Of a stretch of DNA of 64,000 nucleotides, positions 3,197-23,734 are shown piece after piece. The notes under the pieces are model-generated. The model was not told where the DNA came from. It ran no database searches and saw nothing but the letters and a program-made list of their open reading frames with translations. The stretch covers positions 62,001 through 126,000 of the IMG/VR virus record IMGVR_UViG_3300042289_000986. One strand, written 5' to 3'. Each line of letters opens with the position of its first letter. Within the stretch, counting starts at the first letter, position 1. The translations under genes and the position numbers were made by a program.

Positions 3197-3653
3197 TGGA
3201 GGTGAGGAGAGTTGAACTCCTGTCCAAATAATCTAGGCTAAAAGGTCTACATGTTTGAGTGTCTTTAGCATTTCAGCCACCATACGGTAACGGAGACTTT
3301 AGGCTGCATAGTGACACTAACTGAGTTTATAGTCTGCCTGTAGACATTATCGCAATCTACATACGGTTGATATTTTGTTGTTACGTTAGAACTACCAACA
3401 ATCTAACAACCTCTGCTATCAATGATTCTTTAGAGGATCCAGAATCAAGGTTCTTAGGCGGCTAAGAGCATCTCTTCATCCGCATATGAGGCGAGAACCT
3501 CATCAGCGTTGTTGAAAATACTCTCGGCTTCTGCCAAGAGATCAGAAGTGAAATCTTCTGCATTTAGTTTTTTAATCGATTTTTTACGAGGCCATCGATT
3601 AACCTCGACATGCACTTTTAGTTTCAACTATCTGTCGAAACCAGTACACCCCC
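3197..3653 (-). ncRNA. ssrA: tmRNA (about 457 nt)
   Basis: 5' GGGGGTGTACTGGTTTCGAC; 3' GACAGGAGTTCAACTCTCCTCACCTCCA; acceptor stem with G3.U70; internal tag frame 3561-3454 ending LLAA-stop. Confidence 0.95.
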
Positions 3654-3654
3654 A

Positions 3655-3669
3655 AATTTTCAAAGAACA
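3655..3669 (-). promoter_or_regulatory. boxA-like antitermination element upstream of tmRNA
   Basis: Minus strand TGTTCTTTGAAAATT immediately before the tmRNA 5' end. Confidence 0.6.
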
Positions 3670-3676
3670 GATCTAT

Positions 3677-4849
3677 TTAGTCAACCTTCAAAGTTTTACC
3701 CAATGAATTGATTGTGGCTTTTTTATTGGTAACCTTAACCAATTCAACGCCTGTGCTATCTTCAGAATAATTGACAATACAAAAACCATTTTGCCAATTT
3801 GCGCCTTTAACATAGGTAGGATTCAGTTTACATGCACATCCGATTTCATGGTTCTCAATAATTTCCATTGGACGAGAACCAATCTTTGGAATGGTTTGAT
3901 ATGTTGATCCCAAACGATGAGTATGGCTTGTAATAGTAGAAGCAAAATGTTTTTCAAAATTACCTCTAGCAGAGAAGCCACCATGCTTACGAACAATATC
4001 ACCATGATAAACAAACACGTTATTTGGCAACTCTACCAAAGAATCCATATCATCTGTAGCATCTACTAAACGAATTCTTGACCAATCAGCTTGAGGATGG
4101 AACACCTTCGTATATGAGAGATTCTCTGCAATTTGTGGAAGCTCTAAAAGTTGTTTGATATCATCACTGGCAGAAATGTATCTCCACCAACGACCTTCGA
4201 TACCATTACCTGAATGGTTTCCATTCGTTTCAAGAATCTCTGCTTTAAATGGTTCTGTAATATCATGAAGAATTTTGAGAAATTTATGATAAGCCTCAAT
4301 TTCATCATTGATACTATGACCATGACGAGCATCTTTAGAATACTTGCTAATAGAAAGAAGATCAACCGTATCACCATTAAGAATAATTCTTTCTGGTTTC
4401 ATTTCTTCGACAGCTTGAAGAAAGATGTTGATCGTATCCCAACACTCAAAACCAAAGTGAGTGTCACCAATAATCATTGTTGATTTGTTGGCAACCGAAT
4501 ATGTTTTAGGTTTTACTGGAGCAGGATATTGGACGTATTTAACATTTTCCAAAAACTCTTTCAAACGTTCTTGGCGGAAATCATTTTTGGTCATTCCTGC
4601 AAGATAAGGAGTTTCAAAAGATTCCGTAGTTTCTTCTTCAGTAATAATATTGATTGGGTTGTCATTCTCATCAAAAGAATTTTGAACTGTTGTCTTAACA
4701 GTAGTATTGCGGCGGCGACCTGTAACCCAATCGTGAATGGTTGATCTTGGAACGCCTAACAGTTCAGAAATTTCTGTTTTGGTTTTACCTCTTCCGTGAA
4801 GCTGTAAAACTTTTTTACGTTTAATATTTCGATCTGAATTTATATTCAT
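3677..4849 (-). CDS. N-terminal HTH fused to calcineurin-like metallophosphoesterase
   Basis: KTEISELLGVPRSTIHDW HTH; GDTH, GDTVD, GNH, HG, SHTH motifs. Confidence 0.8.
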   Translation of the reverse strand: MNINSDRNIKRKKVLQLHGRGKTKTEISELLGVPRSTIHDWVTGRRRNTTVKTTVQNSFDENDNPINIITEEETTESFETPYLAGMTKNDFRQERLKEFLENVKYVQYPAPVKPKTYSVANKSTMIIGDTHFGFECWDTINIFLQAVEEMKPERIILNGDTVDLLSISKYSKDARHGHSINDEIEAYHKFLKILHDITEPFKAEILETNGNHSGNGIEGRWWRYISASDDIKQLLELPQIAENLSYTKVFHPQADWSRIRLVDATDDMDSLVELPNNVFVYHGDIVRKHGGFSARGNFEKHFASTITSHTHRLGSTYQTIPKIGSRPMEIIENHEIGCACKLNPTYVKGANWQNGFCIVNYSEDSTGVELVKVTNKKATINSLGKTLKVD

Positions 4850-4850
4850 A

Positions 4851-4885
4851 TTGCCAATATTAAGCTACTGTGGTATATTTGTCAA
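4851..4885. promoter_or_regulatory. Overlapping divergent sigma70-type promoters
   Basis: Plus: TTGCCA-N17-TATATT; minus: TTGACA-N17-TAATAT, ending 7 nt before the ATG at 4849. Confidence 0.65.
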
Positions 4886-4894
4886 ATCTTTTTT

Positions 4895-5227
4895 GTGAAT
4901 AAATATATGATGGAAGAACAAGAATACTTTCAACTGAATGAAAAACTGAAAGAAGAACTGGTTTTAAAATACGAAGCATTTGAAGTTAAAACTATTTTTT
5001 ATCCTAATGGTTTTAGTATTGTACCATATCCTTTTTATGAATCAATTGCTAGATGGCATAAAGATGTAGATGAGAAAATAATAGCAAGAGGAATGGCTAA
5101 AATTTGGAAATATCAAAAAAAGATAAACGATTTGTGTGAAATGTCTGATCCTGTGTTTGAAACTAGCTACGGCCATCCACAAATCGTCTGGGCTATATTT
5201 CCTGACAATATTGACACTCCAAATTGA
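4895..5227 (+). CDS. Hypothetical protein
   Basis: ORF downstream of the divergent promoter. Confidence 0.55.
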   Translation: MNKYMMEEQEYFQLNEKLKEELVLKYEAFEVKTIFYPNGFSIVPYPFYESIARWHKDVDEKIIARGMAKIWKYQKKINDLCEMSDPVFETSYGHPQIVWAIFPDNIDTPN

Positions 5228-5245
5228 TAATTATTAATATCTCCA

Positions 5246-5692
5246 ATGGAATCATATACACACCGAAGATCAGCAGATAAAAGCGATGCTAAAGTTAATA
5301 TAATTGAATTTTTAAACCAATTTGAAGTAAAACACAGAGCATTTATCAGTTTAATTTTAAGACCGCTGTTTATGCTTTTGATGTTTTTATCTGTAGGATA
5401 TTATACAATGTGGCTTTCATCAACATACGTTAAACAAACTCAATTTGGTCAATATATCGAAAAACAAGACGTAGAAGACGCAAAACAAGATGAATTAGCC
5501 AAAACACGATTTGAAGTAGTACAAACTAAATTGGATGCAATCATCAATCAACAAACAATATACACTGAACAATTAAAATCTGTAAATCAACTGATGGTTA
5601 ATCAACAAAAAGATGTTGATGATTTAAATGAAAGAGTTACATATATAGAGAGAAATATTAGAAATTATTATTCTGAACCAAATACACCATGA
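5246..5692 (+). CDS. Single-TM protein with C-terminal coiled coil
   Basis: Hydrophobic segment about aa 33-58; heptad-rich C-terminus. Confidence 0.55.
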   Translation: MESYTHRRSADKSDAKVNIIEFLNQFEVKHRAFISLILRPLFMLLMFLSVGYYTMWLSSTYVKQTQFGQYIEKQDVEDAKQDELAKTRFEVVQTKLDAIINQQTIYTEQLKSVNQLMVNQQKDVDDLNERVTYIERNIRNYYSEPNTP

Positions 5693-7236: not shown

Positions 7237-7307
7237 GCCTGGTTAGTTTAATGGTAAAACGGTTGATTTGTAATCATCTGACACCAGTTCGATTCTGGTA
7301 CTGGGCT
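7237..7307 (+). tRNA. tRNA-Thr(TGT)
   Basis: Acceptor GCCTGGT/ACTGGGC; anticodon loop TT-TGT-AA; TTCGATT T-loop. Confidence 0.9.
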
Positions 7308-7315
7308 TTTTAAAT

Positions 7316-7392
7316 TGCGGGATAGCAGTTCTGGTGAACTCAAGTGTCTCATAAGCACTTTTAGGTGGGTTCGATTCCCACTCCCGCTACCA
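7316..7392 (+). tRNA. tRNA-Met(CAT), initiator-like acceptor end
   Basis: Loop CT-CAT-AA; U1:U72 mismatch; encoded CCA. Confidence 0.88.
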
Positions 7393-7396
7393 ACTT

Positions 7397-7618
7397 ATGT
7401 ATGTACCATCTAAGCATTTTGAAAACCCTGAACAAGAAATAGTTTGTCTTTTAACAGGAGAATCTTATGTTTATTTAGAAGGCGATGATTTATCTCTAAT
7501 AGATCCAAAATATCATGAAGGATCTATAACAGAGCTACCAAAAAGATTTTTTCAACATCCTACTGGTATTTCAAAAGGAAATGGACAAGTTAGAATTTTA
7601 ATGCCCAAGATCCAATAA
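7397..7618 (+). CDS. Hypothetical protein
   Basis: ORF within tRNA region. Confidence 0.45.
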   Translation: MYVPSKHFENPEQEIVCLLTGESYVYLEGDDLSLIDPKYHEGSITELPKRFFQHPTGISKGNGQVRILMPKIQ

Positions 7619-7685
7619 TGTGACGAAATCTTAACTTGTTAGTTGGCACAAATGGTGCTAAATAAATGTGTGAAAGGAGGTATAC

Positions 7686-7847
7686 ATGGAAAAACATTAT
7701 CAAACACACCAATTGGGGATTGTTTTTGGTCCTTATGGTTCAGTTGGATATGTAGGAACAATACAGCGAGAAGATTTGAAAGAAATCGCTCAGATTTTTT
7801 TCGGATTGTTTCGTTGGGTTAAAACAACTTTAGCTTCATTGTTCTAA
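7686..7847 (+). CDS. 53-aa peptide with strong Shine-Dalgarno (not in ORF track)
   Basis: AAAGGAGGT-atac-ATG; MEKHYQTHQLGIVFGPYGSVGYVG...IFFGLFRWVKTTLASLF; followed by a terminator. Confidence 0.6.
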   Translation: MEKHYQTHQLGIVFGPYGSVGYVGTIQREDLKEIAQIFFGLFRWVKTTLASLF

Positions 7848-7857
7848 TCATAAACAC

Positions 7858-7885
7858 AACCCCTCTCGAAAGAGAGGGGTTTTTT
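7858..7885 (+). terminator. Intrinsic terminator
   Basis: AACCCCTCTC-GAAA-GAGAGGGGTT then T-run. Confidence 0.85.
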
Positions 7886-7921
7886 ATTTGACTTTTAAAA
7901 TATTTTTAGTATATTCTTATT

Positions 7922-8083
7922 ATGGACATCACATTTTTACTTCTTCGTTGGTTGGCAATTTTTACTGGATATTTTTTAATTGGATTAAGTATTGGTGCAG
8001 TATTATCTTTCATTTGGATTTCTTGGCGAGAAAAAAGAGCCAATAAACAATTCATGAAAGAAATTCTAAGTAAAAGAAAATAA
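7922..8083 (+). CDS. 53-aa single-TM membrane peptide (not in track)
   Basis: TTGACT..TATATT promoter ending 6 nt before ATG; hydrophobic N-half, basic tail. Confidence 0.55.
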   Translation: MDITFLLLRWLAIFTGYFLIGLSIGAVLSFIWISWREKRANKQFMKEILSKRK

Positions 8084-8090
8084 TTTTTAT

Positions 8091-8162
8091 GTCGCCATCG
8101 TCTAACGGTTAGGACACATGGTTTTCATCCATGTAATCGGAGTTCGATTCTCCGTGGCGATG
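8091..8162 (+). tRNA. tRNA-Glu(TTC)
   Basis: Anticodon arm CATGG-TT-TTC-AT-CCATG. Confidence 0.92.
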
Positions 8163-8167
8163 CTTTT

Positions 8168-8241
8168 GCGGAATTAGTTTAATGGTAAAACTGGACTCTT
8201 CCAAAGTCAGGACGAGGGTTCGATTCCCTCATTCCGCACCA
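8168..8241 (+). tRNA. tRNA-Gly(TCC)
   Basis: Acceptor GCGGAAT/ATTCCGC; loop CT-TCC-AA; CCA encoded. Confidence 0.92.
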
Positions 8242-8275
8242 CTTGACTTCTTTGTTTTGAAAATAAATTAATCAT

Positions 8276-8491
8276 ATGATTAATGCAGAAGTAAGAATAC
8301 CAAAACGAGGAGATGCAAAACTTAATTTAGATAGAGCACTTCAAAGACTAAAAACAAAATTAATGATCGAAGGAACTATGGATACTGTTCGATCAAAAAG
8401 AGCTTTTGAAACACCTAAAGAAAGAAGTGAAAGAAAACTTAAACAAAGATTAAAAATGATCAAGAAAAAATCTTTGACAAAAAGTAGATAA
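8276..8491 (+). CDS. rpsU: 30S ribosomal protein bS21
   Basis: V-x-I...LDRALQRLKTK..EG.M..VRSKRAFETPKERSERK pattern; 71 aa, basic. Confidence 0.88.
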   Translation: MINAEVRIPKRGDAKLNLDRALQRLKTKLMIEGTMDTVRSKRAFETPKERSERKLKQRLKMIKKKSLTKSR

Positions 8492-8509
8492 ACGTCTATA
8501 AATGATAAT

Positions 8510-9064
8510 GTGAAAACATTAATCATTCACCCAAAAGATACAAGTACTGTTTTTTTAGAACCAATCTACGAAAAGATTGATAACAAAACAGTTATCCAAA
8601 AAGATTGTTCCTTTGAACAACTTATTAATCTCATTGAAACACACGATAGAATTATGATGATGGGTCATGGTTCTCCTGATGGATTATTTTCTATTGGTAA
8701 TTTTGATGAGGGGTATGTTATTGATAAAAATATTGTGGATTTTTTAAAAAAGAAAAAAGAATGTTTTTATCTTTGGTGCAACGCTGATAAATTTGTTGAA
8801 AAATATCAATTGAATGGATTTTATTCAGGAATGTTTATTTCCGAAGTTAATGAGGCAAATTTTTGTAATGTGAATACCGATCAAAAATTGGTTAATGAAT
8901 CAAATTATTCTTTTTCTAAAATTGTTTCTAAATGGGCAAATTATGATATGAAAAACTTGTATGATAATGTAAAGATGGAATATAGCAAACTTGCAGAGTT
9001 TAATAATGTAGCTCTTTATAATTTAAAAAGACTTTATTATCAAACTAGCATAAATATTATTTGA
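8510..9064 (+). CDS. Hypothetical protein (caspase/CHAT-like GHG motif)
   Basis: IMMMGHGSPDG and LWC; TTGACA promoter upstream. Confidence 0.45.
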   Translation: MKTLIIHPKDTSTVFLEPIYEKIDNKTVIQKDCSFEQLINLIETHDRIMMMGHGSPDGLFSIGNFDEGYVIDKNIVDFLKKKKECFYLWCNADKFVEKYQLNGFYSGMFISEVNEANFCNVNTDQKLVNESNYSFSKIVSKWANYDMKNLYDNVKMEYSKLAEFNNVALYNLKRLYYQTSINII

Positions 9065-9097
9065 CAAAAGGAAAGATCTTTGATATGTTAGTAATAC

Positions 9098-9400
9098 GAT
9101 TTGGTGGCAGTTATAACCAAATCAGGATAAAAATTTTTGCTTGTTGGTGAGTTGGGGTTTTTATCTGAGCTAGGGGAGCCAAGCTGCGGTAAGCTATGAT
9201 CCTATGCATTTATACAATACAAGCTATGGACGAAGTTGTGTTCTGCGGATTGCGGAGCCTTCGTTGAGTAGTGGGACAAATTCTAGAATAAAACCCACTA
9301 AACACCAATTCGGGTTAATCTTGTAAGAGGAGCCGACTTTCCGTGGTTGTATAAACATGGCTGAGATTAGTCCTGAATCGTCGCGGGTAAACGATTCACA
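9098..9400 (+). ncRNA. Unassigned structured ncRNA (about 300 nt)
   Basis: Own promoter TTGACA(9061)-N17-TATGTT; GC-rich; no ORF; multiple nested helices. Confidence 0.7.
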
Positions 9401-9466
9401 TTTTCAGTAAATATTATTGTTATTTTTCTCGCGGAAACTTAGAGGTTTTTGCGAAAGGAGATAACA

Positions 9467-9571
9467 ATGACATTAATAATAGGAACAATAGTCTTAGCAT
9501 TTAACATTAAACTTGCATGTTTAGGTTATTTGGTAATGATTACAGAAATGTTTGGCAGACACACTCGATAA
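9467..9571 (+). CDS. 34-aa hydrophobic peptide with strong SD (not in track)
   Basis: AAAGGAG-ataaca-ATG; MTLIIGTIVLAFNIKLACLGYLVMITEMFGRHTR. Confidence 0.55.
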   Translation: MTLIIGTIVLAFNIKLACLGYLVMITEMFGRHTR

Positions 9572-9596
9572 TGAATGATTCTGACTAACGTTTTTG

Positions 9597-9630
9597 AAAC
9601 AAGGGTAGAGAAATCTACCCTTGTTTTTTT
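9597..9630 (+). terminator. Intrinsic terminator
   Basis: AAACAAGGGTAGA-GAAA-TCTACCCTTGTTT then T-run. Confidence 0.85.
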
Positions 9631-9657
9631 ATAACTTAATGATATATTGTTTACATG

Positions 9658-9744
9658 GGTGCGATGGCTGAGTGGTCTAAAGCAGGAGTTTACTAAACTC
9701 TCGAAGTTTAATCGCTTCCGTGGGTTCGAATCCTACTCGCACCG
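9658..9744 (+). tRNA. tRNA-Ser(ACT)
   Basis: Acceptor GGTGCGA/TCGCACC, G73, long variable arm, loop TT-ACT-AA. Confidence 0.88.
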
Positions 9745-9750
9745 TTTTTT

Positions 9751-10164
9751 ATGGAAATAACAGAATACGATCCGTTTAAAAAATCAATTGTTCCTTATGG
9801 CTTAGATAGGGGTGCTCCTAAATTTGATATAATTGAAACAAAAACTAAAAAAGATCAGCACTACAATCTTGCAGTGCAACAAGCACAAAAAGAATTTGAA
9901 AATCTTAAACAAATAGCTGATGTAATTAATAAACAAGCTCAACAAATAAAAGAGCGTTTAGAAATTACAGAACTTGTATATAACGCCGAACGTACCTTTA
10001 CCCCTGTTGTTGGAGCCAACTACTGGCTTATAAAAGATACAAAAAAAAATAATATAAAAATTGTTGTTTTGGGTCCGAAAGAATGGGCTACAAAACATCC
10101 AGAAAATTATGAATATATTTCAGAAGTTCAATTTTTAGCTAATGGACTTTGGGAAAAGTTGTGA
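9751..10164 (+). CDS. DUF2452-like protein
   Basis: PYG..RGAPKF, coiled coil, F.PVVG.NYWL, W at C-end. Confidence 0.6.
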   Translation: MEITEYDPFKKSIVPYGLDRGAPKFDIIETKTKKDQHYNLAVQQAQKEFENLKQIADVINKQAQQIKERLEITELVYNAERTFTPVVGANYWLIKDTKKNNIKIVVLGPKEWATKHPENYEYISEVQFLANGLWEKL

Positions 10165-10485: not shown

Positions 10486-10490
10486 TTTAA

Positions 10491-16246: not shown

Positions 16247-16257
16247 ATTTAAAAAAG

Positions 16258-16597: not shown

Positions 16598-16607
16598 ATT
16601 TTTATAA

Positions 16608-16789
16608 TCCGAGAATCCTAACGAGATTCTAGTCAGTACCCACTGATGAATAGAAGCTGTTCGTTACAGTAATAAGGGGGATGGTTGCCGTGACTCGCAT
16701 ACGGTGTGCGTAAGTTGACTCGTCTGAAAAGATAGGGAGTCCGTGCTTGATTCCGAAAGGAAAATGATGGTATGTAAAGACAGCCGAAA
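16608..16789 (+). ncRNA. Unassigned structured ncRNA, 3' domain/RNA B (about 180 nt)
   Basis: Hairpins AGAATC/GATTCT, TCAGT/ACTGA, GCTGT/ACAGT, GACTC/GAGTC; two GAAA tetraloops. Confidence 0.65.
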
Positions 16790-16814
16790 TTTTTTAATTC
16801 TTTTATAATTTAAT

Positions 16815-16888
16815 TCCTTGGTGGGCTAACGGTAAGCCAACAAACTGTTAATTTGTTCATCATGCTGGTTCGAATCCAGCCCAAGGAG
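16815..16888 (+). tRNA. tRNA-Asn(GTT)
   Basis: TCCTTGG/CCAAGGA; ACAAA-CT-GTT-AA-TTTGT. Confidence 0.92.
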
Positions 16889-16970
16889 CTTTTATTAAAT
16901 GTATAAAAATGGTGTTATACTAAGCCAAACCATTATATAAAATGTTACATATAATATGTAAGTATTATAT

Positions 16971-17525
16971 ATGAGTATAAATGCAGATCGTGTTAAAGCT
17001 TGGAGAAAAGATACTAAAAATTTAATTGTTGAAGGGTTTGGAGGAAAATGTTGTATATGTGGTTATGATAAATGTGAAGAAGCTTTTGATATACACCATA
17101 TAGATCCTACTCAAAAGACATTATCTTTTGGAGGAATAAGAGCTAATCCTAAACAATGGAAAATTTTATTAAAAGAGTTAGAAAATTGCGTTTTATTGTG
17201 TGCTAACTGTCACAGAGAATATCATGCAGGTAAAACTAACATCCCAAAAAATATTCCAAAATTTGTAGATTTAAAAGAAAAAAGAAAAATAAAAACATAT
17301 TGTCCAATTTGTAATAAGCAAAAAGCAAATTATCTTATAACTTGTTCAAAAACTTGTGCTGCAAAAAGAAAATCTCAAATCGAATGGGATAATTTTGATT
17401 TATATGATTTACACGTAATTCAAAAATTAAGTAATCTTAAAATAGGAAAAATAGTTGGTGCTTCTGATGTTGCAGTTATAAAAAGATTAAAAAAATTAAA
17501 AATTTATCAACTTCAAAATAATTAG
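16971..17525 (+). CDS. HNH endonuclease with Zn fingers and C-terminal HTH
   Basis: CCICG..FDIHHIDP..CVLLCANCHREYH; CPIC..CSKTC. Confidence 0.85.
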   Translation: MSINADRVKAWRKDTKNLIVEGFGGKCCICGYDKCEEAFDIHHIDPTQKTLSFGGIRANPKQWKILLKELENCVLLCANCHREYHAGKTNIPKNIPKFVDLKEKRKIKTYCPICNKQKANYLITCSKTCAAKRKSQIEWDNFDLYDLHVIQKLSNLKIGKIVGASDVAVIKRLKKLKIYQLQNN

Positions 17526-17540
17526 TGTATAATTACTATT

Positions 17541-17660
17541 ATGAAAAAACTATTATATACTATTATCTTTGTTAGTATTTGTTTACTTGTTTCTGGATGT
17601 TATAGCACAAAATCTATGGGCGATTCAGAAAAAGCAGACAAATATCTTTTTATCTATTAA
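17541..17660 (+). CDS. 39-aa lipoprotein (not in track)
   Basis: MKKLLYTIIFVSICLLVSG-C; TATAAT 7 nt upstream. Confidence 0.55.
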   Translation: MKKLLYTIIFVSICLLVSGCYSTKSMGDSEKADKYLFIY

Positions 17661-17666
17661 CTTAAA

Positions 17667-17918
17667 TTATTTTTGATTACAACTATCTAAAAGTTCTTTA
17701 TAAACTCTGTTTATATTTTCCATAGCTTGACAGAGCATAGATATGGAACTTGGATGATTAATAGCATTAGAATATTCTTTTATTTCTTCAGCATTTGCTG
17801 AAATGGTCATTCTTAATCTAATTTCTTTAGGTGATATAGAATTTTTTTTATTTGAGTCGCAACAAGAAGCAACTGTTTCATATAATTTTTCTAAACTGGT
17901 TTGGTCTTTTTTCGCCAT
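17667..17918 (-). CDS. Small protein with KDQ leader
   Basis: MAKKDQTSLEKLYE; TAAATA 5 nt upstream. Confidence 0.55.
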   Translation of the reverse strand: MAKKDQTSLEKLYETVASCCDSNKKNSISPKEIRLRMTISANAEEIKEYSNAINHPSSISMLCQAMENINRVYKELLDSCNQK

Positions 17919-17926
17919 AATAATAT

Positions 17927-18493
17927 TTATACAATTAAATCACTAACAATCAAAATTAGAGTTTTTGCTCTTGTTTCAAATTCTTCATCAGCACAAGGAG
18001 TTTCCAGTGTGCAATATGGAATGTTTCTTCTTCTCAATGCACGTTCTAAAGTTCCCTTATATGGTTGCTGACCATTTGAAATAACACCTTGATCTGTAAC
18101 ATCCCCATGTGCTTTTACTGCCAGTTGGATTTTACTTTTCATTAAAGCACCTTTTACCTTGTCTTCAATTTCTGGAGAACAATAAGCATAAACTCCATCT
18201 ACTTCATCATCTTCGTGTAAAGAAATAACAAGTGTTGGATTCAGTTCTTCAATTTTAGAAAGAAGTCTGTCTTGTAAATCGTTTTGATCATCAGTGTCAA
18301 AATGACGATTGGGATCTTTTCCATTCAATCTTCTTTTCTTAGTTTTATTTAAATTAGAATAAACCTTGACGTTTGGGAGATTTTTAAAATAGTTTGCAGC
18401 AATATTTCCAGCAGGTTCATCACCATGCAAACCACTAACAATCACAAAAACGTTTGGGTTTAAAAGATTTTCTACTAATGCGTCAAATTTCAC
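17927..18493 (-). CDS. M14-family Zn carboxypeptidase/deacylase (AstE/MpaA-like); start reassigned to GTG 18493
   Basis: GLHGDEPAG, DPNRHF, ISLHED, TLE; TAAGTA 5 nt before GTG. Confidence 0.8.
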   Translation of the reverse strand: MKFDALVENLLNPNVFVIVSGLHGDEPAGNIAANYFKNLPNVKVYSNLNKTKKRRLNGKDPNRHFDTDDQNDLQDRLLSKIEELNPTLVISLHEDDEVDGVYAYCSPEIEDKVKGALMKSKIQLAVKAHGDVTDQGVISNGQQPYKGTLERALRRRNIPYCTLETPCADEEFETRAKTLILIVSDLIV

Positions 18494-18689
18494 TTTAATA
18501 CTTATTTTCTTATAGACAAAAAGCCAAGTTGTGATAAAATAAAAAAAATGAAAAAGTACTGCATATTTCCTGATGAAACTAAAATAGAACTTCATTCAAT
18601 TTTAGATGTAACAGATACACAAACATATATCTGTTATTATGATGAAAATCTTCCACAAACACTTTGGGTTCCGAATGATTTTTTGAGCA

Positions 18690-19703
18690 ATGATTAAACA
18701 CGTTGATGTTATTGTCGGTCTTGCTTGGGGGGATGAAGGCAAGGGTAAAATTTCAAGTGCAATGGCCAAAGACTATGATATGGTCTGTCGTTGGAATGGT
18801 GGACCAAATGCTGGTCATACTGTTTATTTGGATGGGAAAAAATACAAAACCCATCTGATTCCTTCTGGTGTTTTTCATGGAAAGAAATCTGTTATCGGTC
18901 CAAACTGTGTTCTGAATATTGAGAAGTTTTTCAAAGAAATTGAATATCTAAAAGAAAATGGATTCGATACATCTTTGGTAAAAGTTCATCCAAATACTCA
19001 TGTGATTACGGATGCACACATTGAATATGATCTGAAACATTTGAAACCAAAACTTGGAACTACAGGTCAAGGTATTGCTCCTTGTTATGCAGACAAAGCA
19101 AATCGTGTTGGTATTCAGGTTAGTAAAGCAAACTTCAATCCCTTAAAAGATTTTATTTGGGATGGAAAATTAGAAGGAAAAATTCTTTGTGAAGGTGCTC
19201 AAAGTATTTGGTTGGATATCAACTACGGTGATTATCCTTATGTGACAAGCTCTGAAACATTTCCTCACAATGCTTGTTCGCTTGGATTTTCACCCAAGAA
19301 AATTCGTGATATTATTGGTGTCGCTAAAATCTATGATACCAAAAGTGGAGTTGATCCGTTGTTTCCAGAATGTCTTTGGAGTGATGTAAAACTAAACAAG
19401 TTAATTGAACTTGGTCAAGAATTTGGTTCTACTACAGGAAGAAAAAGACTTGTGAATTGGTTGAATTTTGGAAGATTAAACAATGCTATTAATCTTTCAG
19501 GTTCAACCAAAGTAATCATCAATAAGTGTGATGTTTTTGAAAAAGTTGGAATCTTCCGAATTAATAATTTTTACGAAACATCTTTGGAAACAAATTCTTT
19601 TGATCAGTTAAAAGACATCATTAAAAAGTCTTTGGTAAATCAAAACATCAATGGATTAAAACCAAATAATATTATTTTTTCTGGTGATCAGACGAATATT
19701 TAA
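18690..19703 (+). CDS. purA: Adenylosuccinate synthetase (short form)
   Basis: GLAWGDEGKGK, GGPNAGHT, GTTGQGI, EGAQ, YPYVTSS, EFGSTTGRKR. Confidence 0.95.
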   Translation: MIKHVDVIVGLAWGDEGKGKISSAMAKDYDMVCRWNGGPNAGHTVYLDGKKYKTHLIPSGVFHGKKSVIGPNCVLNIEKFFKEIEYLKENGFDTSLVKVHPNTHVITDAHIEYDLKHLKPKLGTTGQGIAPCYADKANRVGIQVSKANFNPLKDFIWDGKLEGKILCEGAQSIWLDINYGDYPYVTSSETFPHNACSLGFSPKKIRDIIGVAKIYDTKSGVDPLFPECLWSDVKLNKLIELGQEFGSTTGRKRLVNWLNFGRLNNAINLSGSTKVIINKCDVFEKVGIFRINNFYETSLETNSFDQLKDIIKKSLVNQNINGLKPNNIIFSGDQTNI

Positions 19704-19704
19704 A

Positions 19705-20196
19705 TTAATCTTCAAAAAAACTTCCGTGCATATCCCATGCTATTTTGTCTAGTGCTGTTGAATCCATTTTTATAAAACTAGTGTTTTTTAACAAATCAAC
19801 TAAAAGCTTTTGAATTAACTCAAACTCATTGTCTAAATTTTCATAGGGAGATAATGAATATTTTTTAGAGTAATATTCTAAGACATTAGGATTTTTAAAT
19901 GCTCTATCAATAAATTTATCTAAAAGTTTTTTTGCAATTACATCCAGATTATCGCCTTCTTCGGTAAGAAAATTTTGATATCCGAACATAACAGATGGAT
20001 TTAAAACGGCTTCGTTAGAATCGTTTTCTTCCTCACGATCATCTTGCTGTGTATATAAGTTCGACTTATCGAGTTTATCTAAATTTCCTGCCGACATTTT
20101 CATATCCGAATCGGGTAATTCTTCGTTTGTATTAACAACTTCTTTTAAAACTTTTTGATAAGCATCTTCTAATAAAATTTGATCTTTGCTTTTCAT
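19705..20196 (-). CDS. Acidic protein with KDQxLLExAY leader
   Basis: MKSKDQILLEDAYQKVLKE; TAAATA upstream. Confidence 0.65.
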   Translation of the reverse strand: MKSKDQILLEDAYQKVLKEVVNTNEELPDSDMKMSAGNLDKLDKSNLYTQQDDREEENDSNEAVLNPSVMFGYQNFLTEEGDNLDVIAKKLLDKFIDRAFKNPNVLEYYSKKYSLSPYENLDNEFELIQKLLVDLLKNTSFIKMDSTALDKIAWDMHGSFFED

Positions 20197-20231
20197 TATG
20201 ATATATTTACTCCAAATTTAATCAATTTAAT

Positions 20232-20444
20232 ATGATAAATATGAATATAGTGAACGTGGCAGATACTTCTTTATATAAAGAATTCTTAGCAATGAGAGAA
20301 GAAGTCATGAAACACAAGTGGTATGAATCCGAAAAAGCTGGATATGATATCGGCTTCGCAAGAGCAGTGATTGATTGGACAATGAGGTTTAAAACTCAGT
20401 GGATTAAAAATAGAAAAAAAAAAATTAAGATTCTTTGTATCTAG
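20232..20444 (+). CDS. DUF4032-like small protein
   Basis: SLYKEFLAMREEVMKHKWYESEKAGYDIGF..AVIDW. Confidence 0.7.
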   Translation: MINMNIVNVADTSLYKEFLAMREEVMKHKWYESEKAGYDIGFARAVIDWTMRFKTQWIKNRKKKIKILCI

Positions 20445-20700
20445 GTGAATGGGAAAGATCAATTATAATTTCTCGCATTTTATCAAATTTTTGATATAAT
20501 GGCTTGAGATCTTCAGAAGTAAAAGCATCTTTTAAGTTTTGATCGTTTAAAAGAGACTCTACTGTATTTAAAGCTTTAAAAAAAGCTTCTTTAGCAAGTC
20601 TTTTTGATCTAGCTTTTCTTAAAAAATAATCGGAACTATATTCTTTTAATATTTCATTTTCATATGCTTCGGATAACATATTTAAATCTTTTCTATTCAT
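20425..20700 (-). CDS. Small protein with KDxxxLxEAY leader
   Basis: MNRKDLNMLSEAYENEILKE; TAAATA upstream. Confidence 0.55.
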   Translation of the reverse strand: MNRKDLNMLSEAYENEILKEYSSDYFLRKARSKRLAKEAFFKALNTVESLLNDQNLKDAFTSEDLKPLYQKFDKMREIIIDLSHSPRYKES

Positions 20701-20759
20701 TATTTAATATTTACAAAAAATACTTGTATCTTTTTAAAAATATGCCATAATTATATTCT

Positions 20760-21287
20760 ATGGTTAAAACATATATCAAACTAATGGTAGTTGGAATTAT
20801 TGCATTGACTTCTACAGTCATGGCTGGTTCTGACTTGAAATCAAGCAAAGAAGTCGTTGTAGATTCTTGCCGCTTTCGCAGCAATGAACTCCAATTAGAC
20901 CTCTTTGGTTCTGGTGCGTTCTATAAGCAAGGTAAACCTGCTTGGGGTGGTGGCGTTGGTGTCAACTACTTCTTCCTCAAGTATGTTGGACTTGGCGTAG
21001 AACAAACCTTGGTTGGTCGTGAAGATGTTGCTGAATGGGGAACATTCGGTAACTTGTTTCTTCGCTATCCAATCTGTTCTTGGAACGTAGCACCTTATGC
21101 CGTTGCTGGTCTTGGTGCTCTCTACGGACAAACCAAAGCAATCCTTGCTGGAACTGTTGGTGGCGGTCTTGAGTATCGCATCACTGACAATATTGGCATC
21201 TTTGCAGATGCTCGTTGGCTTTACAATGCCAACGTCAGCAACAGTGGAGCAGTTGTTGCTCGCACTGGTATCAAATTTGCTTTTTAA
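20760..21287 (+). CDS. Small outer-membrane beta-barrel (OmpA/OmpW/Ail-like)
   Basis: Sec signal (..VMA-G), amphipathic strands GGGVGVNYF, PYAVAGLG, VGGGLEYR, terminal GIKFAF. Confidence 0.85.
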   Translation: MVKTYIKLMVVGIIALTSTVMAGSDLKSSKEVVVDSCRFRSNELQLDLFGSGAFYKQGKPAWGGGVGVNYFFLKYVGLGVEQTLVGREDVAEWGTFGNLFLRYPICSWNVAPYAVAGLGALYGQTKAILAGTVGGGLEYRITDNIGIFADARWLYNANVSNSGAVVARTGIKFAF

Positions 21288-21300
21288 TTAAAGTAAATCA

Positions 21301-21371
21301 TGGCTCGTAGTGTAACGGTAACACCAGAGAATTTGGATCTCTTATTCATAGTTCGAATCTATGCGAGCCAG
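21301..21371 (+). tRNA. tRNA-Gln(TTG)
   Basis: TGGCTCG/CGAGCCA; AGAGA-AT-TTG-GA-TCTCT. Confidence 0.88.
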
Positions 21372-21375
21372 TTTT

Positions 21376-21458
21376 GGGTAAGCGGTAACGTTGGAGAGTT
21401 ACTTCAGACTGTAAATCTGACGCCATTGGCTTAGTAGGTTCGAATCCTTCCTTACCCA
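21376..21458 (+). tRNA. tRNA-Tyr(GTA)
   Basis: TCAGA-CT-GTA-AA-TCTGA; V-arm GCC/GGC. Confidence 0.92.
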
Positions 21459-21475
21459 TTTTCTTTGAAATTTTA

Positions 21476-21566
21476 GCTGGATTAGTGTAACTGGAAGCAC
21501 CGACAGTTTTATAAACTGTGTGCCCTAGATGAGGGCCGAGCGCGGGTTCAATTCCCGCATCCAGCA
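21476..21566 (+). tRNA. tRNA with TAT (Ile) anticodon and long variable arm
   Basis: GCTGGAT/ATCCAGC; ACAGT-TT-TAT-AA-ACTGT; V-arm GCCCT-AGATG-AGGGC; A73. Confidence 0.85.
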
Positions 21567-21572
21567 TTTTTC

Positions 21573-21592
21573 GCACAGTTAGCTCAGTGGTA
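21573..21592 (+). pseudogene. 5' fragment of a tRNA gene, truncated by the HNH gene
   Basis: GCACAGT-TAGCTCAGTGGTA after the usual T-rich spacer, no continuation. Confidence 0.7.
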
Positions 21593-21998
21593 TGTTTAAA
21601 TTCTTAATCCTATATCTTTTCTTATATGTGGATCTTTTAGAATTTTTTCTGTTTCTGCTACAATAAGTGTCTGTCTGTGAATGACAATTTGGACAAAGCA
21701 ATCTAATATTATTAGGATAGTTATTATCGGAATTACCATCAATATGATCTAAATGTAATGATATGTCTTTATTTTTCCAATTTGATATTTCACAAACCTC
21801 ACATTTATATCCTCTTTTAAATTGTAAAAATTTTTTTAAAGTAGCAGCTTGTGAACATTTATTAGATTCTATTTTAGGAATAGTTATATTGTTAAATGTA
21901 TAGTTTCCTTGACAAGTATTGTTACAATACTTTCCAAAACTTTTACTTTCATCGTATTTTATTTCTTTTTTACAGTTTAAACAAAAAGAAGTTTTCAT
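21579..21998 (-). CDS. HNH homing endonuclease
   Basis: CLNC..CNNTC; CEVC..LHLDHIDGN..N...NIRLLCPNCHSQT. Confidence 0.9.
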   Translation of the reverse strand: MKTSFCLNCKKEIKYDESKSFGKYCNNTCQGNYTFNNITIPKIESNKCSQAATLKKFLQFKRGYKCEVCEISNWKNKDISLHLDHIDGNSDNNYPNNIRLLCPNCHSQTDTYCSRNRKNSKRSTYKKRYRIKNLNIPLS

Positions 21999-22004
21999 AT
22001 ATCA

Positions 22005-22048
22005 TATTTATCCGAGCTATTATACATAAATAAGAGGTCGGATAAATA
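22005..22048. repeat. Inverted repeat carrying outward-facing TAAATA boxes
   Basis: TATTTATCCGA ... TCGGATAAATA (11-bp perfect arms). Confidence 0.7.
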
Positions 22049-22093
22049 AAATATAGTTGATTAATAAGATATTTTAATATAATATATAAATAT

Positions 22094-22167
22094 GGGAGGT
22101 TGTTGTAATGGTAGCGATTCGCATTTACACTGCGACAGCAAAGGTTCGATTCCTTTACCTCCTACCA
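22094..22167 (+). tRNA. tRNA-Val(TAC)
   Basis: TCGCA-TT-TAC-AC-TGCGA; ACCA end. Confidence 0.88.
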
Positions 22168-22170
22168 TTT

Positions 22171-22241
22171 GGGGGATTAGTTAAGTGGTATAACTCCTGA
22201 TTTGCATTCAGGTGTCACCAGTTCGACTCTGGTATCCTCCA
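22171..22241 (+). tRNA. tRNA-Ala(TGC)
   Basis: G3.U70; CCTGA-TT-TGC-AT-TCAGG. Confidence 0.92.
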
Positions 22242-22284
22242 CTTTTTTCTTGTCATTATTTAAACATCTGCTAGACTTAAAAAT

Positions 22285-22572
22285 ATGAATTCTTATATCA
22301 CCGAATTTTTTGGAATATTGATGATGCTTAGTTTTATGCTTTGTTATATTCCACAAATTGTTAAAATTTATAAAAACAAATCATCAGAAGATGTTTCTCT
22401 GATGTTAATTTTAATGTCTATTGTTGGTTATATCTCAGGGATGATTTATATGTTTTTAACTGCTTTTGGTCTTTGGTGGTTTTTAAATTATTGTGTGGGT
22501 TTGATCATGTGTTCTATACTTGTTTATGCATGGTTTAAATTTAAAAAAGATAAAGATTACGATTCTTATTAA
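22285..22572 (+). CDS. PQ-loop / SemiSWEET-like 3-TM transporter
   Basis: YIPQIVKIYKNKSSEDVS; three TM helices; Asn in TM3. Confidence 0.8.
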   Translation: MNSYITEFFGILMMLSFMLCYIPQIVKIYKNKSSEDVSLMLILMSIVGYISGMIYMFLTAFGLWWFLNYCVGLIMCSILVYAWFKFKKDKDYDSY

Positions 22573-22574
22573 AA

Positions 22575-22973
22575 ATGAAAAAAGTAATCACTGTAGATTT
22601 TGATGATACTTTAGCTGCTACAGAAGATGGTGCTTGGTATAGCACAAGCTTGGTGCCGATTCCAAGAATTCTAAATTTTGTTAAACAAAAACATAAAGAA
22701 GGATACGAAATCCATATTGTAACTTTTAGAAATTGGCAAAACAAAGCAGACGTTGAAAGGTTTTGTCAAATACACAAACTACCAATTTCATCTATTGTCT
22801 GCACAGAAGGAACAAACAAAGTTCCCTTTTTAAAGAAACTTAATAGTGAACTTCATGTTGATGATAGTGTAGAAGTTTGTACGCTATGTATAATGGCAAA
22901 AATTGATATTTTGCTTGTTGATTGGGGACAAGATGAACACAACACTACTGCTAAATTTATGCCAAAAATTTAA
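22575..22973 (+). CDS. HAD-superfamily phosphatase
   Basis: DFDDTL, IVT, K, HVDD. Confidence 0.8.
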   Translation: MKKVITVDFDDTLAATEDGAWYSTSLVPIPRILNFVKQKHKEGYEIHIVTFRNWQNKADVERFCQIHKLPISSIVCTEGTNKVPFLKKLNSELHVDDSVEVCTLCIMAKIDILLVDWGQDEHNTTAKFMPKI

Positions 22974-23065
22974 ACAAAAGATACCATATCAAGAAAGCTA
23001 ATATATAGTATCTCACAAAAATATTTATTTGCATTTGCCAATTAAAGTGTTATATTTTTAGTACT

Positions 23066-23356
23066 ATGATTAAAACTGTACAAAAGAAAGAAGAGTTCTT
23101 CATCGAATTTACAGATGAAGAAATGAATGAATTGGGGTTTAAACCTAATACAAAATTCACAGTAGAATTAAGTGAAGACAAAAGTGGTTTAAAGTTAATT
23201 CCCCACGAAGAAATTGATATCGATCTTAATGAATTTTCAAAAGAAGATTTAATTAATATTATTGTTGCTGCAAATAAGGTAGATATGACTTTTGAAGATT
23301 TTGTTGTTGACTCTTTGACAAAATTCTGTGAAGCTCATAAAGAAGAAGAAGACTAA
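23066..23356 (+). CDS. AbrB/MazE-like DNA-binding protein
   Basis: FFIEFTDEEMNELGFKPNTKFTVE pattern. Confidence 0.5.
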   Translation: MIKTVQKKEEFFIEFTDEEMNELGFKPNTKFTVELSEDKSGLKLIPHEEIDIDLNEFSKEDLINIIVAANKVDMTFEDFVVDSLTKFCEAHKEEED

Positions 23357-23359
23357 AAT

Positions 23360-23734
23360 ATGTTAGTAGTCAAAAACAAATTGGCTCCTAGTTCTATACA
23401 TGGATTGGGTGTTTTTGCGGAAGAATTTATTCCTTCTGGTTCGGTTATATGGAAATGGTATAATGGTATAGATGGTAAAACAACTATTGAAACTATAAAA
23501 TCTTTACCAATAGCTTGTCGGGATTTTTTTAAAGTTTATGGTTGGTCTGAAAATGGTATATACAAATATTGTATAGATAATCAAAAATATATAAATCATT
23601 CCGATACACCGAATTGTATTCTTATTGATGGTGGAAATACAGGAATAGCAAATAAAAATATTGACGTTGGAGAAGAAATCACAGAAGATTATAAATCATT
23701 CGTTGATAATTTTGATATAAAAGATTTTAAATAA
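23360..23734 (+). CDS. SET-domain protein-lysine methyltransferase
   Basis: SSIHGLGVFA, YINHSDTPNC, ANKNIDVGEEITEDY. Confidence 0.9.
   Translation: MLVVKNKLAPSSIHGLGVFAEEFIPSGSVIWKWYNGIDGKTTIETIKSLPIACRDFFKVYGWSENGIYKYCIDNQKYINHSDTPNCILIDGGNTGIANKNIDVGEEITEDYKSFVDNFDIKDFK

What the first reader, a model, noticed from the sequence alone, without database searches (positions are those of the whole stretch)
3197..23734. Integrated ribosome-reprogramming kit
Seen within about 20 kb: bS21, bL12-NTD-like peptide, tmRNA, 14 tRNAs (three atypical), unassigned ncRNAs, a SET methyltransferase and a possible GNAT, in a genome with apparently leaderless mRNAs. Known: bS21 lies beside the anti-SD and modulates initiation; bL12 recruits GTPases. 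Inference: the phage edits both the 30S platform and the 50S stalk to favour its own mRNAs. Co-function is unproven.
Basis: inference. Interest (0 to 1): 0.75.

Follow-up and report, generated by a model that had tools for sequence, protein, structure and literature searches.

The report
Jumbo phage translation-gene island
A 212-kb freshwater jumbo phage keeps its tRNAs, a tmRNA, a ribosomal protein bS21 gene, a conserved 43-residue copy of only the anchoring end of ribosomal protein bL12, and two unnamed structured RNAs in one mosaic accessory region; the parts are real, but they are gained and lost separately among related phages rather than behaving as one kit.

Summary
I confirmed the tmRNA, 14 tRNAs (several odd), bS21, a 43-aa bL12 N-terminal-domain peptide (15457-15588), a SET protein and a GNAT-fold candidate. 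I also confirmed two conserved structured RNAs with no Rfam family. About one gene in seven has a promoter-like site placed to give a leaderless mRNA, bS21 included, and the genome shows no Shine-Dalgarno signal.

The "integrated kit" reading is only partly supported. The 20 kb is a mosaic accessory island: more than 30 unknown ORFs, two HNH genes, purA, a GGACT-family gene and a PQ-loop gene. Among five near-complete relatives, the tmRNA is in 5, bS21 in 4, and the bL12 peptide plus ncRNA-B in 3. SET is in 1 of these five, plus an incomplete relative that has neither bS21 nor the peptide. The peptide segment appears to have been exchanged between lineages, whereas bS21 diverged about as much as the terminase.

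The new item is the stand-alone bL12-NTD microprotein. It is a family of 36-44 aa proteins under purifying selection (pN/pS 0.14). It matches the fragment of L7/L12 that binds L10, and the phage has no hinge, C-terminal domain or L10 gene. It most likely caps or dilutes the host stalk. In its closer relatives it lies just upstream of a ~550-nt RNA that is present in lake metatranscriptome assemblies.

The parts
3194..3653 (-). tmRNA (one-piece), tag peptide ADEEMLLAA
   Evidence: Called by ARAGORN. Rfam RF00023 138.4 bits, full length. Present in 5 of 5 near-complete relatives. No SmpB gene in the phage.
7237..22242 (+). Span holding 14 tRNA genes: Thr, Met, Glu, Gly, Ser-ACU, Ser-UGA, Asp, Pro, Asn, Gln, Tyr, class-II UAU, Val, Ala. 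They are interspersed with ORFs.
   Evidence: The order is largely conserved in relatives.
8276..8491 (+). Ribosomal protein bS21 homologue, 71 aa
   Evidence: - Pfam PF01165 31.8 bits.
- The best solved relatives are the P. gingivalis and F. johnsoniae bS21 proteins.
- The protein contains no Tyr, so it has no equivalent of Bacteroidia Tyr54 (direct reading; PMC9976891).
- TTGACT-15-TAAATT-6-ATG lies upstream at 8243-8278.
9096..9330 (+). ncRNA-A: conserved structured RNA with no Rfam family, between the bS21 operon and tRNA-Ser(ACU)
   Evidence: - 72-82% nucleotide identity in relatives.
- 14 of 56 consensus pairs show compensatory changes; covariation term -5.3.
- MFE z-score -2.2.
- No Rfam match.
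- Promoter-like site at 9061-9089.
10788..11219 (+). GNAT-fold candidate, 143 aa
   Evidence: No HMM hit. Carries the R-x-x-G-x-G motif. Atlas structural neighbours are GNATs, TM 0.53-0.63. Present in G002; not found in the parts of G001 that were read.
15457..15588 (+). L12N: stand-alone bL12 N-terminal-domain microprotein, 43 aa
   Evidence: - PF16320 26.3 bits.
- 32 clusters of 29-60 aa, nearly all 36-44, with the invariant core LTI(T/V)ELNELIKSLEPIF.
- The family profile hits T. maritima L7/L12 NTD residues 1-30, E = 1e-5.
- AF2 model: helices 3-13 and 17-31, pLDDT 93-97. The top PDB match is 1zav_U, TM 0.80 normalised to the target.
- pN/pS 0.14.
- No L12 C-terminal domain or L10 gene anywhere in the genome.
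16245..16795 (+). ncRNA-B: about 550-nt conserved structured RNA with no Rfam family, ending about 20 nt before tRNA-Asn
   Evidence: - No ORF of 43 aa or more on either strand.
- MFE z-score -3.8.
- Invariant blocks, variable hairpin insertions and compensatory changes.
- No Rfam match.
- Covariance model R1 finds it only in the L12N-positive genomes G000, G001 and G002 out of 20 relatives.
- Apart from tRNA-Pro-like fragments, it is the only part of window 11101-17100 present in RNA-derived contigs from 4 freshwater metatranscriptome studies.
23360..23734 (+). SET-domain protein, 124 aa
   Evidence: Pfam PF00856 42.9 bits. Absent from G001, G002, G006, G009 and G010. Present in G003 (a near-identical strain) and in G007.

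Best explanation
The stretch is the tRNA-rich accessory island of a ~212-kb freshwater jumbo myovirus. It is a mosaic of independently acquired and independently transcribed modules, several of which act on translation. It is not one co-inherited kit.

Shown:
- All the listed elements exist.
- The genome has no SD signal.
- Many first genes, bS21 included, have a sigma70-like promoter placed so that transcription would start at or next to the ATG.
- The bL12 peptide is a conserved, selected microprotein that equals the L10-binding and dimerising hairpin of bL12. The phage has no hinge, C-terminal domain or L10 gene.
- In the closer relatives, ncRNA-B lies directly downstream of the peptide gene. 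It is present in lake metatranscriptome assemblies while its flanks are not.

Inferred mechanism:
- The tRNAs cover the phage's A/U-rich codon use.
- The tmRNA works with host SmpB.
- bS21 exchanges onto, or is added to, the 30S platform, as shown for another phage's bS21 in E. coli (PMC6375957).
- The L12N peptide pairs with host bL12 N-domains or occupies the L12 sites on bL10 helix alpha-8. Stalks then carry fewer factor-recruiting C-terminal domains, which slows IF2- and EF-G-dependent steps (PMC3299993).

Whether this throttles host synthesis, biases initiation towards phage mRNAs, or serves another purpose is not known.
For: - Elements.
- Genome type: tail sheath, TerL and a PHROG-annotated DNA polymerase (phrog_262); 211,587 bp with terminal repeats.
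- SD-less; leaderless-type promoter spacing.
- L12N family, PDB match, model and selection.
- No L12 C-terminal domain, L10 or SmpB gene.
- Mosaic content.
- Differential conservation.
- Patchy distribution on the TerL tree, with discordant divergence of L12N and bS21.
- ncRNA-B linkage and presence in RNA libraries.
Against: - No direct evidence that either phage protein reaches a ribosome.
- L12N transcripts were not seen in the four metatranscriptomes. Those are contigs, so this is weak negative evidence.
- L12N is always nested within bS21 carriers, which leaves room for functional coupling that I call unproven.
- Only five near-complete relatives were available.
- The host is unknown, and the clues conflict:
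  - bS21 is closest to Bacteroidota proteins among solved structures.
  - L12N is closest to the bL12 of a Parcubacteria-like lineage whose contigs have 31% GC and no SD.
  - The phage promoters are sigma70-type.
Confidence: 0.6

Rival explanations
1. bS21, the L12N peptide, tmRNA, tRNAs, SET and GNAT form one co-adapted system that builds specialised ribosomes: a phage platform protein plus an edited stalk, possibly with methylation or acetylation of ribosomal proteins. These ribosomes would prefer the phage's SD-less or leaderless mRNAs.
For: - All parts lie within 20 kb.
- L12N is never seen without bS21 when enough flank is available.
- The bS21 gene itself looks leaderless.
- A true Pfam GNAT lies 1.3 kb upstream of L12N in a diverged relative.
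Against: - SET is absent from 4 of 5 near-complete relatives, and present in an incomplete one (G007, 73% complete) in which bS21 and L12N were not found.
- G010 has bS21 without L12N, and G006 has neither.
- The relative's GNAT is not homologous to the window's candidate.
- bS21 and L12N have different evolutionary histories.
- The tmRNA position is not conserved.
Confidence: 0.15
2. L12N does not act on assembled ribosomes. It could bind free bL10 and so disturb the autoregulation or assembly of the host stalk operon. It could be a decoy against a host factor that recognises bL12. Or it could work together with ncRNA-B as a small ribonucleoprotein.
For: - Tight linkage of L12N, then ncRNA-B, then tRNA-Asn in the closer relatives; they are only 40 nt apart in G002.
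- ncRNA-B is present in RNA libraries.
- The peptide has an invariant Pro in LEPIF and an acidic tail, both unlike cellular bL12.
Against: - More diverged L12N carriers (L034-L036) have no ncRNA-B within 10 kb.
- The bL12 NTD has no known RNA-binding activity (established knowledge of the family).
- The hydrophobic core positions that build the dimer and the L10 interface are all kept.
Confidence: 0.2
3. The short bL12-like ORF is a decaying remnant of a captured rplL gene and has no function.
For: It is very short and matches only the first half of the Pfam NTD model.
Against: - 32 clusters keep the same 36-44-aa frame with an invariant core.
- pN/pS is 0.14, with synonymous sites near saturation between distant members.
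- Gene packing is tight on both sides.
Confidence: 0.03

Closest known systems
Virus-encoded ribosomal proteins bS21 and bL12 (Mizuno et al. 2019, PMC6375957); translation genes of huge phages (Al-Shayeb et al. 2020, PMC7162821)
   Same: A large aquatic phage encoding bS21, an 'L7/L12' annotation, tRNAs and a tmRNA. The proposed role is replacement of exchangeable host ribosomal proteins.
   Different: The phage bL12 described in 2019 is the C-terminal, factor-binding domain (Pfam Ribosomal_L12). It occurs in podoviruses under 80 kb, often embedded in larger proteins. Here only the N-terminal L10-binding hairpin is encoded, as a free ~40-aa protein in a jumbo myovirus. A full-text search for Ribosomal_L12_N together with phage found no paper.
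Freshwater bS21-encoding phages of Bacteroidetes (Chen et al. 2022, PMC9723584)
   Same: Freshwater, large genomes, a bS21 gene, and the proposal that phage bS21 swaps into host ribosomes.
   Different: There, bS21 sits on the reverse strand inside the structural block (terminase, capsid, protease). Here it lies 46 kb from TerL inside the tRNA island. It has a sigma70-like leaderless-type promoter and lacks the Bacteroidia Tyr54 equivalent.
L10-(L7/L12 NTD) stalk complex of Thermotoga maritima (PDB 1zav, 1dd3)
   Same: Residues 6-31 of the peptide family align to L7/L12 residues 4-29, with all core hydrophobic positions kept. The model has the same two-helix hairpin.
   Different: Cellular bL12 continues into a hinge and a C-terminal domain. 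The phage peptide ends in a Pro-containing turn (LEPIF) and a short, variable, acidic tail.
Large ornate phage-associated RNAs found next to tRNAs (GOLLD, ROOL)
   Same: ncRNA-B is several hundred nucleotides long, has many hairpins with GNRA-type loops, is phage-encoded, lies beside a tRNA, and is found in lake RNA data.
   Different: No match to the GOLLD or ROOL models, or to any other Rfam 15 model, even at E up to 10. The resemblance rests on my recollection of those families, not on a test.

Membership tests
Ribosomal protein bS21 (PF01165) | Sequence match above the curated Pfam threshold over the conserved core | tested here: met
   31.8 bits against a cut-off of 27, residues 17-60. 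Six-frame search gives 31.4 bits.
Ribosomal protein bS21 (PF01165) | Incorporation into the 30S platform next to the 16S 3' end | not testable with these tools
   Only a precedent for another phage's bS21 in E. coli (PMC6375957).
Bacteroidia-type bS21 (anti-SD sequestering) | Conserved Tyr54 that stacks on A1534 (PMC9976891) | tested here: not met
   The 71-aa protein contains no tyrosine. The aligned region reads KQRLKMIK.
bL12 N-terminal domain (PF16320) | Sequence match above the curated threshold | tested here: met
   26.3 bits against a cut-off of 25, though covering only profile positions 1-25 of 48. The family profile hits PDB 1zav and 1dd3 at E = 1e-5.
bL12 N-terminal domain (PF16320) | Two-helix hairpin fold | tested here: met
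   AF2 helices 3-13 and 17-31, pLDDT 93-97. Best PDB match 1zav_U, TM 0.80 normalised to the target, rmsd 2.2 A. The Foldseek E-value is not significant because the match is so short.
bL12 N-terminal domain (PF16320) | Dimerisation and binding to bL10 helix alpha-8 | not testable with these tools
   Inferred only from conserved hydrophobic positions.
Full-length ribosomal protein bL12 | Hinge plus C-terminal factor-binding domain (PF00542) | tested here: not met
   The ORF stops after 43 aa. No PF00542 match anywhere in the genome in six frames.
tmRNA (RF00023) | Full-length covariance-model match with a tag reading frame | tested here: met
   138.4 bits, model positions 1-374. Tag ADEEMLLAA*.
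SET-domain methyltransferase (PF00856) | SET domain match above threshold | tested here: met
   42.9 bits against a cut-off of 22.4, full profile 1-105. Substrate not testable.
GNAT acetyltransferase | HMM match to a GNAT family | tested here: not met
   No Pfam match at E up to 10 for 10788-11219. PF00583 and PF13302 found nothing in the genome.
GNAT acetyltransferase | GNAT fold and the acetyl-CoA motif Q/R-x-x-G-x-G/A | tested here: inconclusive
   RMKGLG is present. The Atlas model (pTM 0.77) has TM 0.53-0.63 to GNAT clusters, including RimI. I did not run my own model or a PDB search.
Known Rfam RNA families (including GOLLD and ROOL) | Covariance-model match for ncRNA-A or ncRNA-B | tested here: not met
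   Nothing relevant at E up to 10 on the isolated stretches.

The most novel reading that the evidence does not exclude
The phage makes CTD-poor ribosomal stalks on purpose. The free bL12 N-domain peptide caps host bL10 or heterodimerises with host bL12. Together with the phage bS21, this creates a distinct ribosome population tuned to the phage's SD-less and leaderless messages. The abundant ~550-nt ncRNA-B, encoded directly downstream, would be a partner or regulator of this switch. A corollary is that the donor, and possibly the host, is a low-GC, SD-less Parcubacteria-like lineage, which would make this a jumbo phage of Patescibacteria.
Probability: 0.12. Interest if true: 0.85.

Novelty: new variant of a known kind. 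Interest (0 to 1): 0.6.

Why it matters
Phage-encoded bS21, tRNAs and tmRNAs are already established, so that part is ordinary.

What is new is a virus that encodes only the anchoring module of the stalk protein, as a selected microprotein. This gives a simple, testable way for a virus to change how many factor-recruiting domains a host ribosome carries. That parameter is known to control the IF2 and EF-G steps. The peptide is small enough to synthesise and add to purified ribosomes.

The two unnamed structured RNAs add candidates to the short list of large phage RNAs of unknown function. One of them is present in lake metatranscriptome assemblies.

The comparative result also matters as a caution: co-location in a phage accessory island is weak evidence of co-function.

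Tried and rejected
- Megablast of 9 kb against GenBank phages found no match.
- bS21 against genome contigs gave no confirmed hit. The bS21 word-based search returned only the same phage clade, at 63% identity or more, so no cellular donor could be named.
- bS21 searched against 301 Patescibacteria genomes and against 167 genomes of another phylum gave only 20-25-bit hits, which is uninformative.
- I meant the phylum of locus L180 to stand for Bacteroidota. It held only 167 genomes, so it is probably a different GTDB phylum. I do not use as a Bacteroidota control.
- Comparing tRNAs with the Parcubacteria-like contigs gave 61-74% identity, which carries no host signal.
- I considered that ncRNA-B might mimic the L11/L10-binding region of 23S rRNA, because of a shared UUGGCUUAGA run. 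I rejected this: that hairpin is variable in relatives, and no rRNA model matched.
- A 20-nt exact match in G008 proved not to be homologous.
- The ORFs carrying the motif KDQ-x-LLE-x-AY (for example 6356-6670) looked at first like the 'bL12-like peptide'. They have no Pfam match.

Full report
**What the window is.** The window is bases 62001-126000 of a 211,587-bp IMG/VR virus record with direct terminal repeats and 32% G+C. It encodes a tail sheath, a large terminase and a PHROG-annotated DNA polymerase (phrog_262), so it is a jumbo myovirus. Related contigs and the RNA libraries that hold parts of it come from freshwater and lake metagenomes.

**Checking the observation.**
- ARAGORN and Rfam agree on a full-length tmRNA at 3194-3653 on the minus strand, 138 bits, with tag ADEEMLLAA.
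- ARAGORN finds 14 tRNAs between 7237 and 22242. Rfam's tRNA model confirms 13 of them. The genome has 20 tRNAs in all; the other six lie 12-26 kb upstream of the window.
- Three or four tRNAs are unusual:
  - a seryl-type long-arm tRNA with anticodon ACU;
  - a 91-nt long-arm tRNA with anticodon UAU and discriminator A73, which is conserved after tRNA-Tyr in relatives;
  - a weak tRNA-Met with a U1-U72 mismatch.
- bS21 is at 8276-8491 (31.8 bits, cut-off 27) and the SET protein is at 23360-23734.
- A six-frame search with the bL12 N-domain model found the peptide at 15457-15588 (26.3 bits, cut-off 25).
- The best GNAT candidate is 10788-11219. It has no HMM support. It does carry R-x-x-G-x-G, and its Atlas model resembles GNATs, RimI included, at TM 0.53-0.63.

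**Leaderless or SD-less?** Upstream of 206 long ORFs, G makes up only 6-12% of bases at positions -10 to -1, and GGAG-type motifs are rare (at most 6% of genes), so there is no positional SD signal. Most genes abut or overlap the previous gene, so they are internal to operons rather than leaderless.

There is nevertheless a real leaderless-type signal. When TTGACN-N14-18-TANNNT occurs within 60 nt of a predicted start, 13 of 23 cases end 5-10 nt before the ATG. In total, 14% of 281 predicted genes have a -35/-10-like pair at that spacing, against 3% at a control offset. bS21 is one of them: TTGACT-15-TAAATT-6-ATG. These are sigma70-type elements.

**The bL12 peptide.** This is the most interesting part.
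- A search of 5.8 billion proteins returned 32 clusters. They span 29-60 aa and nearly all are 36-44 aa, at 71-100% identity to the query. They share the invariant core LTI(T/V)ELNELIKSLEPIF and a variable acidic tail. Several sit on contigs of 150-226 kb.
- An exhaustive profile search of 1.84 billion representatives found only a handful of short clusters of this type. The remaining hits were ordinary or fragmentary bL12.
- The family profile matches residues 4-29 of Thermotoga L7/L12. That is the 30-residue fragment crystallised on L10 (1zav, 1dd3; E = 1e-5).
- AlphaFold gives helices 3-13 and 17-31 at pLDDT 93-97, followed by a disordered tail. The top PDB match is 1zav_U.
- Across 12 distinct gene copies, pN/pS is 0.14. 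Synonymous sites are nearly saturated between distant members (16 of 18.8) while only 7 of 80 non-synonymous sites differ.
- The genome has no bL12 C-terminal domain and no bL10 gene.

So this is a translated, selected, stand-alone anchoring module. The phage bL12 described by Mizuno et al. is the other, C-terminal domain, found in small podoviruses. Al-Shayeb et al. list 'L7/L12' among huge-phage genes without this distinction. A full-text search found no paper that mentions the N-domain model together with phage.

**Is it a kit?**
- All seven L12N-positive viral loci belong to one clade. Every one with enough upstream sequence has bS21 5-11 kb upstream.
- With the terminase as a marker I collected 80 relatives and searched 20 of the longest records. 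Results for the near-complete genomes and two less complete ones are tabulated below.

| Genome | TerL identity to G000 | Completeness | tmRNA | bS21 | L12N | SET |
|---|---|---|---|---|---|---|
| G000 | 100% | near-complete | + | + | + | + |
| G002 | 80% | near-complete | + | + | + | - |
| G006 | 73% | near-complete | + | - | - | - |
| G010 | 67% | near-complete | + | + | - | - |
| G001 | 66% | near-complete | + | + | + | - |
| G007 | 69% | 73% | + | - | - | + |
| G009 | 67% | 82% | + | - | - | - |

- On the terminase tree the L12N carriers fall in two separate, well-supported places: G000/G002, and G001 as sister of the L12N-negative G010.
- Between G000 and G001 the L12N core is identical in protein, with pS 0.17, and purA and the HNH gene are 94-97% identical. 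By contrast bS21 is 61% and TerL 66% identical. The L12N segment has therefore moved between lineages, while bS21 diverged with the backbone.
- The tmRNA lies between bS21 and L12N, on the other strand relative to them, in G001. It is 28 kb from bS21 in G010.
- The rest of the 20 kb is more than 30 ORFs without family assignment, two HNH endonucleases, adenylosuccinate synthetase, a GGACT-family (gamma-glutamyl cyclotransferase-like) protein, a PQ-loop protein, two phosphoesterase-like proteins and a peptidase-like protein.

This is a mosaic accessory island, not an integrated unit. The nested pattern (L12N only in bS21 carriers) keeps a functional link possible, but it rests on few independent events.

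**The unassigned RNAs.**

ncRNA-B (about 16245-16795):
- It contains no ORF of 43 aa or more and has higher G+C than its flanks.
- It folds better than all 100 shuffles, z = -3.8.
- In relatives it shows long invariant blocks, hairpin insertions with GNRA/UUCG loops, and compensatory changes.
- It has no Rfam match even when searched alone at E up to 10.
- It always lies between L12N and tRNA-Asn, 40 nt to 1.4 kb after L12N. It is present in the three L12N-positive complete genomes and in none of the other 17 relatives by covariance model. More diverged L12N carriers lack it.
- In four freshwater metatranscriptome studies, the only parts of a 6-kb stretch found in RNA-derived contigs were ncRNA-B and tRNA-Pro-like fragments. 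The flanking genes had zero coverage, which argues against DNA carry-over.

ncRNA-A (about 9096-9330):
- 14 of 56 consensus pairs have compensatory changes among five sequences.
- It has no Rfam match.
- It has only weak presence in RNA libraries.

Both RNAs are preceded by TTGAC(A/T)-N16/17 promoter-like sites with a TG-extended -10. Such sites are not enriched overall in the region.

**Host.** The host is unresolved.
- Among solved structures, the phage bS21 is closest to the Porphyromonas and Flavobacterium proteins, and SD-less initiation fits Bacteroidota. However, the protein has no tyrosine, so it lacks the Tyr54 that redirects the 16S tail in Bacteroidia, and the promoters are sigma70-type.
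- The L12N profile scores 48-51 bits on the bL12 of a set of cellular contigs. These carry rplJ-rplL, TrpRS, IF2, FtsK and Mur ligase. It scores 46-48 bits on a Parcubacteria genome, 39 bits or less on 400 other Patescibacteria, and 30 or less on the other taxa sampled.
- Those cellular contigs have 31% G+C and no SD signal, like the phage.
- Two Patescibacteria genomes from that sampling (the Parcubacteria genome G023 and G024) have no bS21 gene.
- This suggests at least the donor of the N-domain, and perhaps the host. The evidence rests on a 31-residue match and 37 ORF starts.

**Mechanism.**
- Shown: the sequence, fold prediction, conservation and selection of the peptide, and the absence of the rest of bL12.
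- From established knowledge: bL12 N-domains dimerise and bind 10-residue segments of bL10 helix alpha-8; the C-terminal domains recruit IF2, EF-Tu, EF-G and RF3; and losing one dimer slows IF2 and EF-G steps (PMC3299993).
- Inferred: a free N-domain would form mixed dimers or occupy bL10 sites, and so lower the number of C-terminal domains per ribosome.

Whether that is a shut-off device, a selectivity device acting together with bS21, or something off the ribosome cannot be decided here.

**Verdict.** bS21, tRNAs and tmRNA in huge phages are known. The N-domain-only bL12 microprotein and the two RNAs are new variants worth experiments.

Noticed in passing
window 16245-16795 (+): A conserved, structured RNA of about 550 nt with no Rfam family. 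It lies directly upstream of tRNA-Asn and downstream of the bL12 peptide gene. It is present in RNA-derived contigs of four freshwater metatranscriptome studies, while the flanking genes are not.
   Followed up: yes
window 9096-9330 (+): A second conserved structured RNA with no Rfam family, between the bS21 operon and tRNA-Ser(ACU). 14 of 56 predicted pairs show compensatory changes among five sequences.
   Followed up: partly
window 21476-21566 (+): A 91-nt tRNA with a long variable arm (class II, like Leu, Ser or Tyr), anticodon UAU and discriminator A73. ARAGORN calls it Ile. It is conserved right after tRNA-Tyr in relatives. If it is charged by LeuRS it would read AUA as Leu; I did not test its identity.
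   Followed up: partly
window 9658-9744 (+): A seryl-type tRNA with anticodon ACU (unmodified A34 is rare in bacteria). It is conserved in several relatives.
   Followed up: partly
window 9468-9572 (+): A 34-aa hydrophobic ORF (MTLIIGTIVLAFNIKLACLGYLVMITEMFGRHTR) preceded by a clear AAGGAG Shine-Dalgarno 6 nt upstream, in a genome that otherwise has none. A strong hairpin-plus-U-run terminator follows at about 9593-9628.
   Followed up: no
window 6356-6670, 11229-11957, 17667-17918 (-), 19705-20196 (-), 20425-20700 (-), 39396 onward; also genome position 31558: Seven ORFs share the N-terminal motif M-x-(K/R)-K-D-Q-x-L-L-E-x-A-Y and have unrelated tails. None matches Pfam. This may be a targeting or interaction tag.
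   Followed up: partly
whole genome; examples at window 4885 (-), 5211, 7888, 8243, 10556, 31057, 42571 (-): Sigma70-like -35/-10 pairs end 5-10 nt before start codons far more often than at other offsets. About 14% of genes are affected, which implies leaderless first genes of operons. The promoter type argues against a Bacteroidota-style host sigma factor.
   Followed up: yes
window 18690-19703, 15829-16203, 22285-22572: Metabolic accessory genes inside the island: a short (337-aa) adenylosuccinate synthetase that is 94% identical across distant relatives, a GGACT-family (gamma-glutamyl cyclotransferase-like) gene found only in this strain, and a single PQ-loop (SemiSWEET-like) membrane protein.
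   Followed up: partly
loci L147-L152, L153 (cellular contigs): The full-length bL12 proteins closest to the phage peptide belong to a Parcubacteria-like lineage. Its contigs have 31% G+C and no SD signal, as the phage does. Two Patescibacteria genomes from that sampling have no bS21 gene.
   Followed up: partly
locus L036:17-463: In a relative whose L12N is 72% identical, a bona fide Pfam GNAT acetyltransferase lies 1.3 kb upstream of the peptide gene, and the tmRNA lies 2.2 kb downstream. This GNAT is not homologous to the window's GNAT-fold candidate.
   Followed up: partly
genome C1:1-143 and 211444-211587: A 143-bp terminal overlap is consistent with a complete genome with terminal repeats. 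The first 50 bases are also tandemly repeated at position 51.
   Followed up: no
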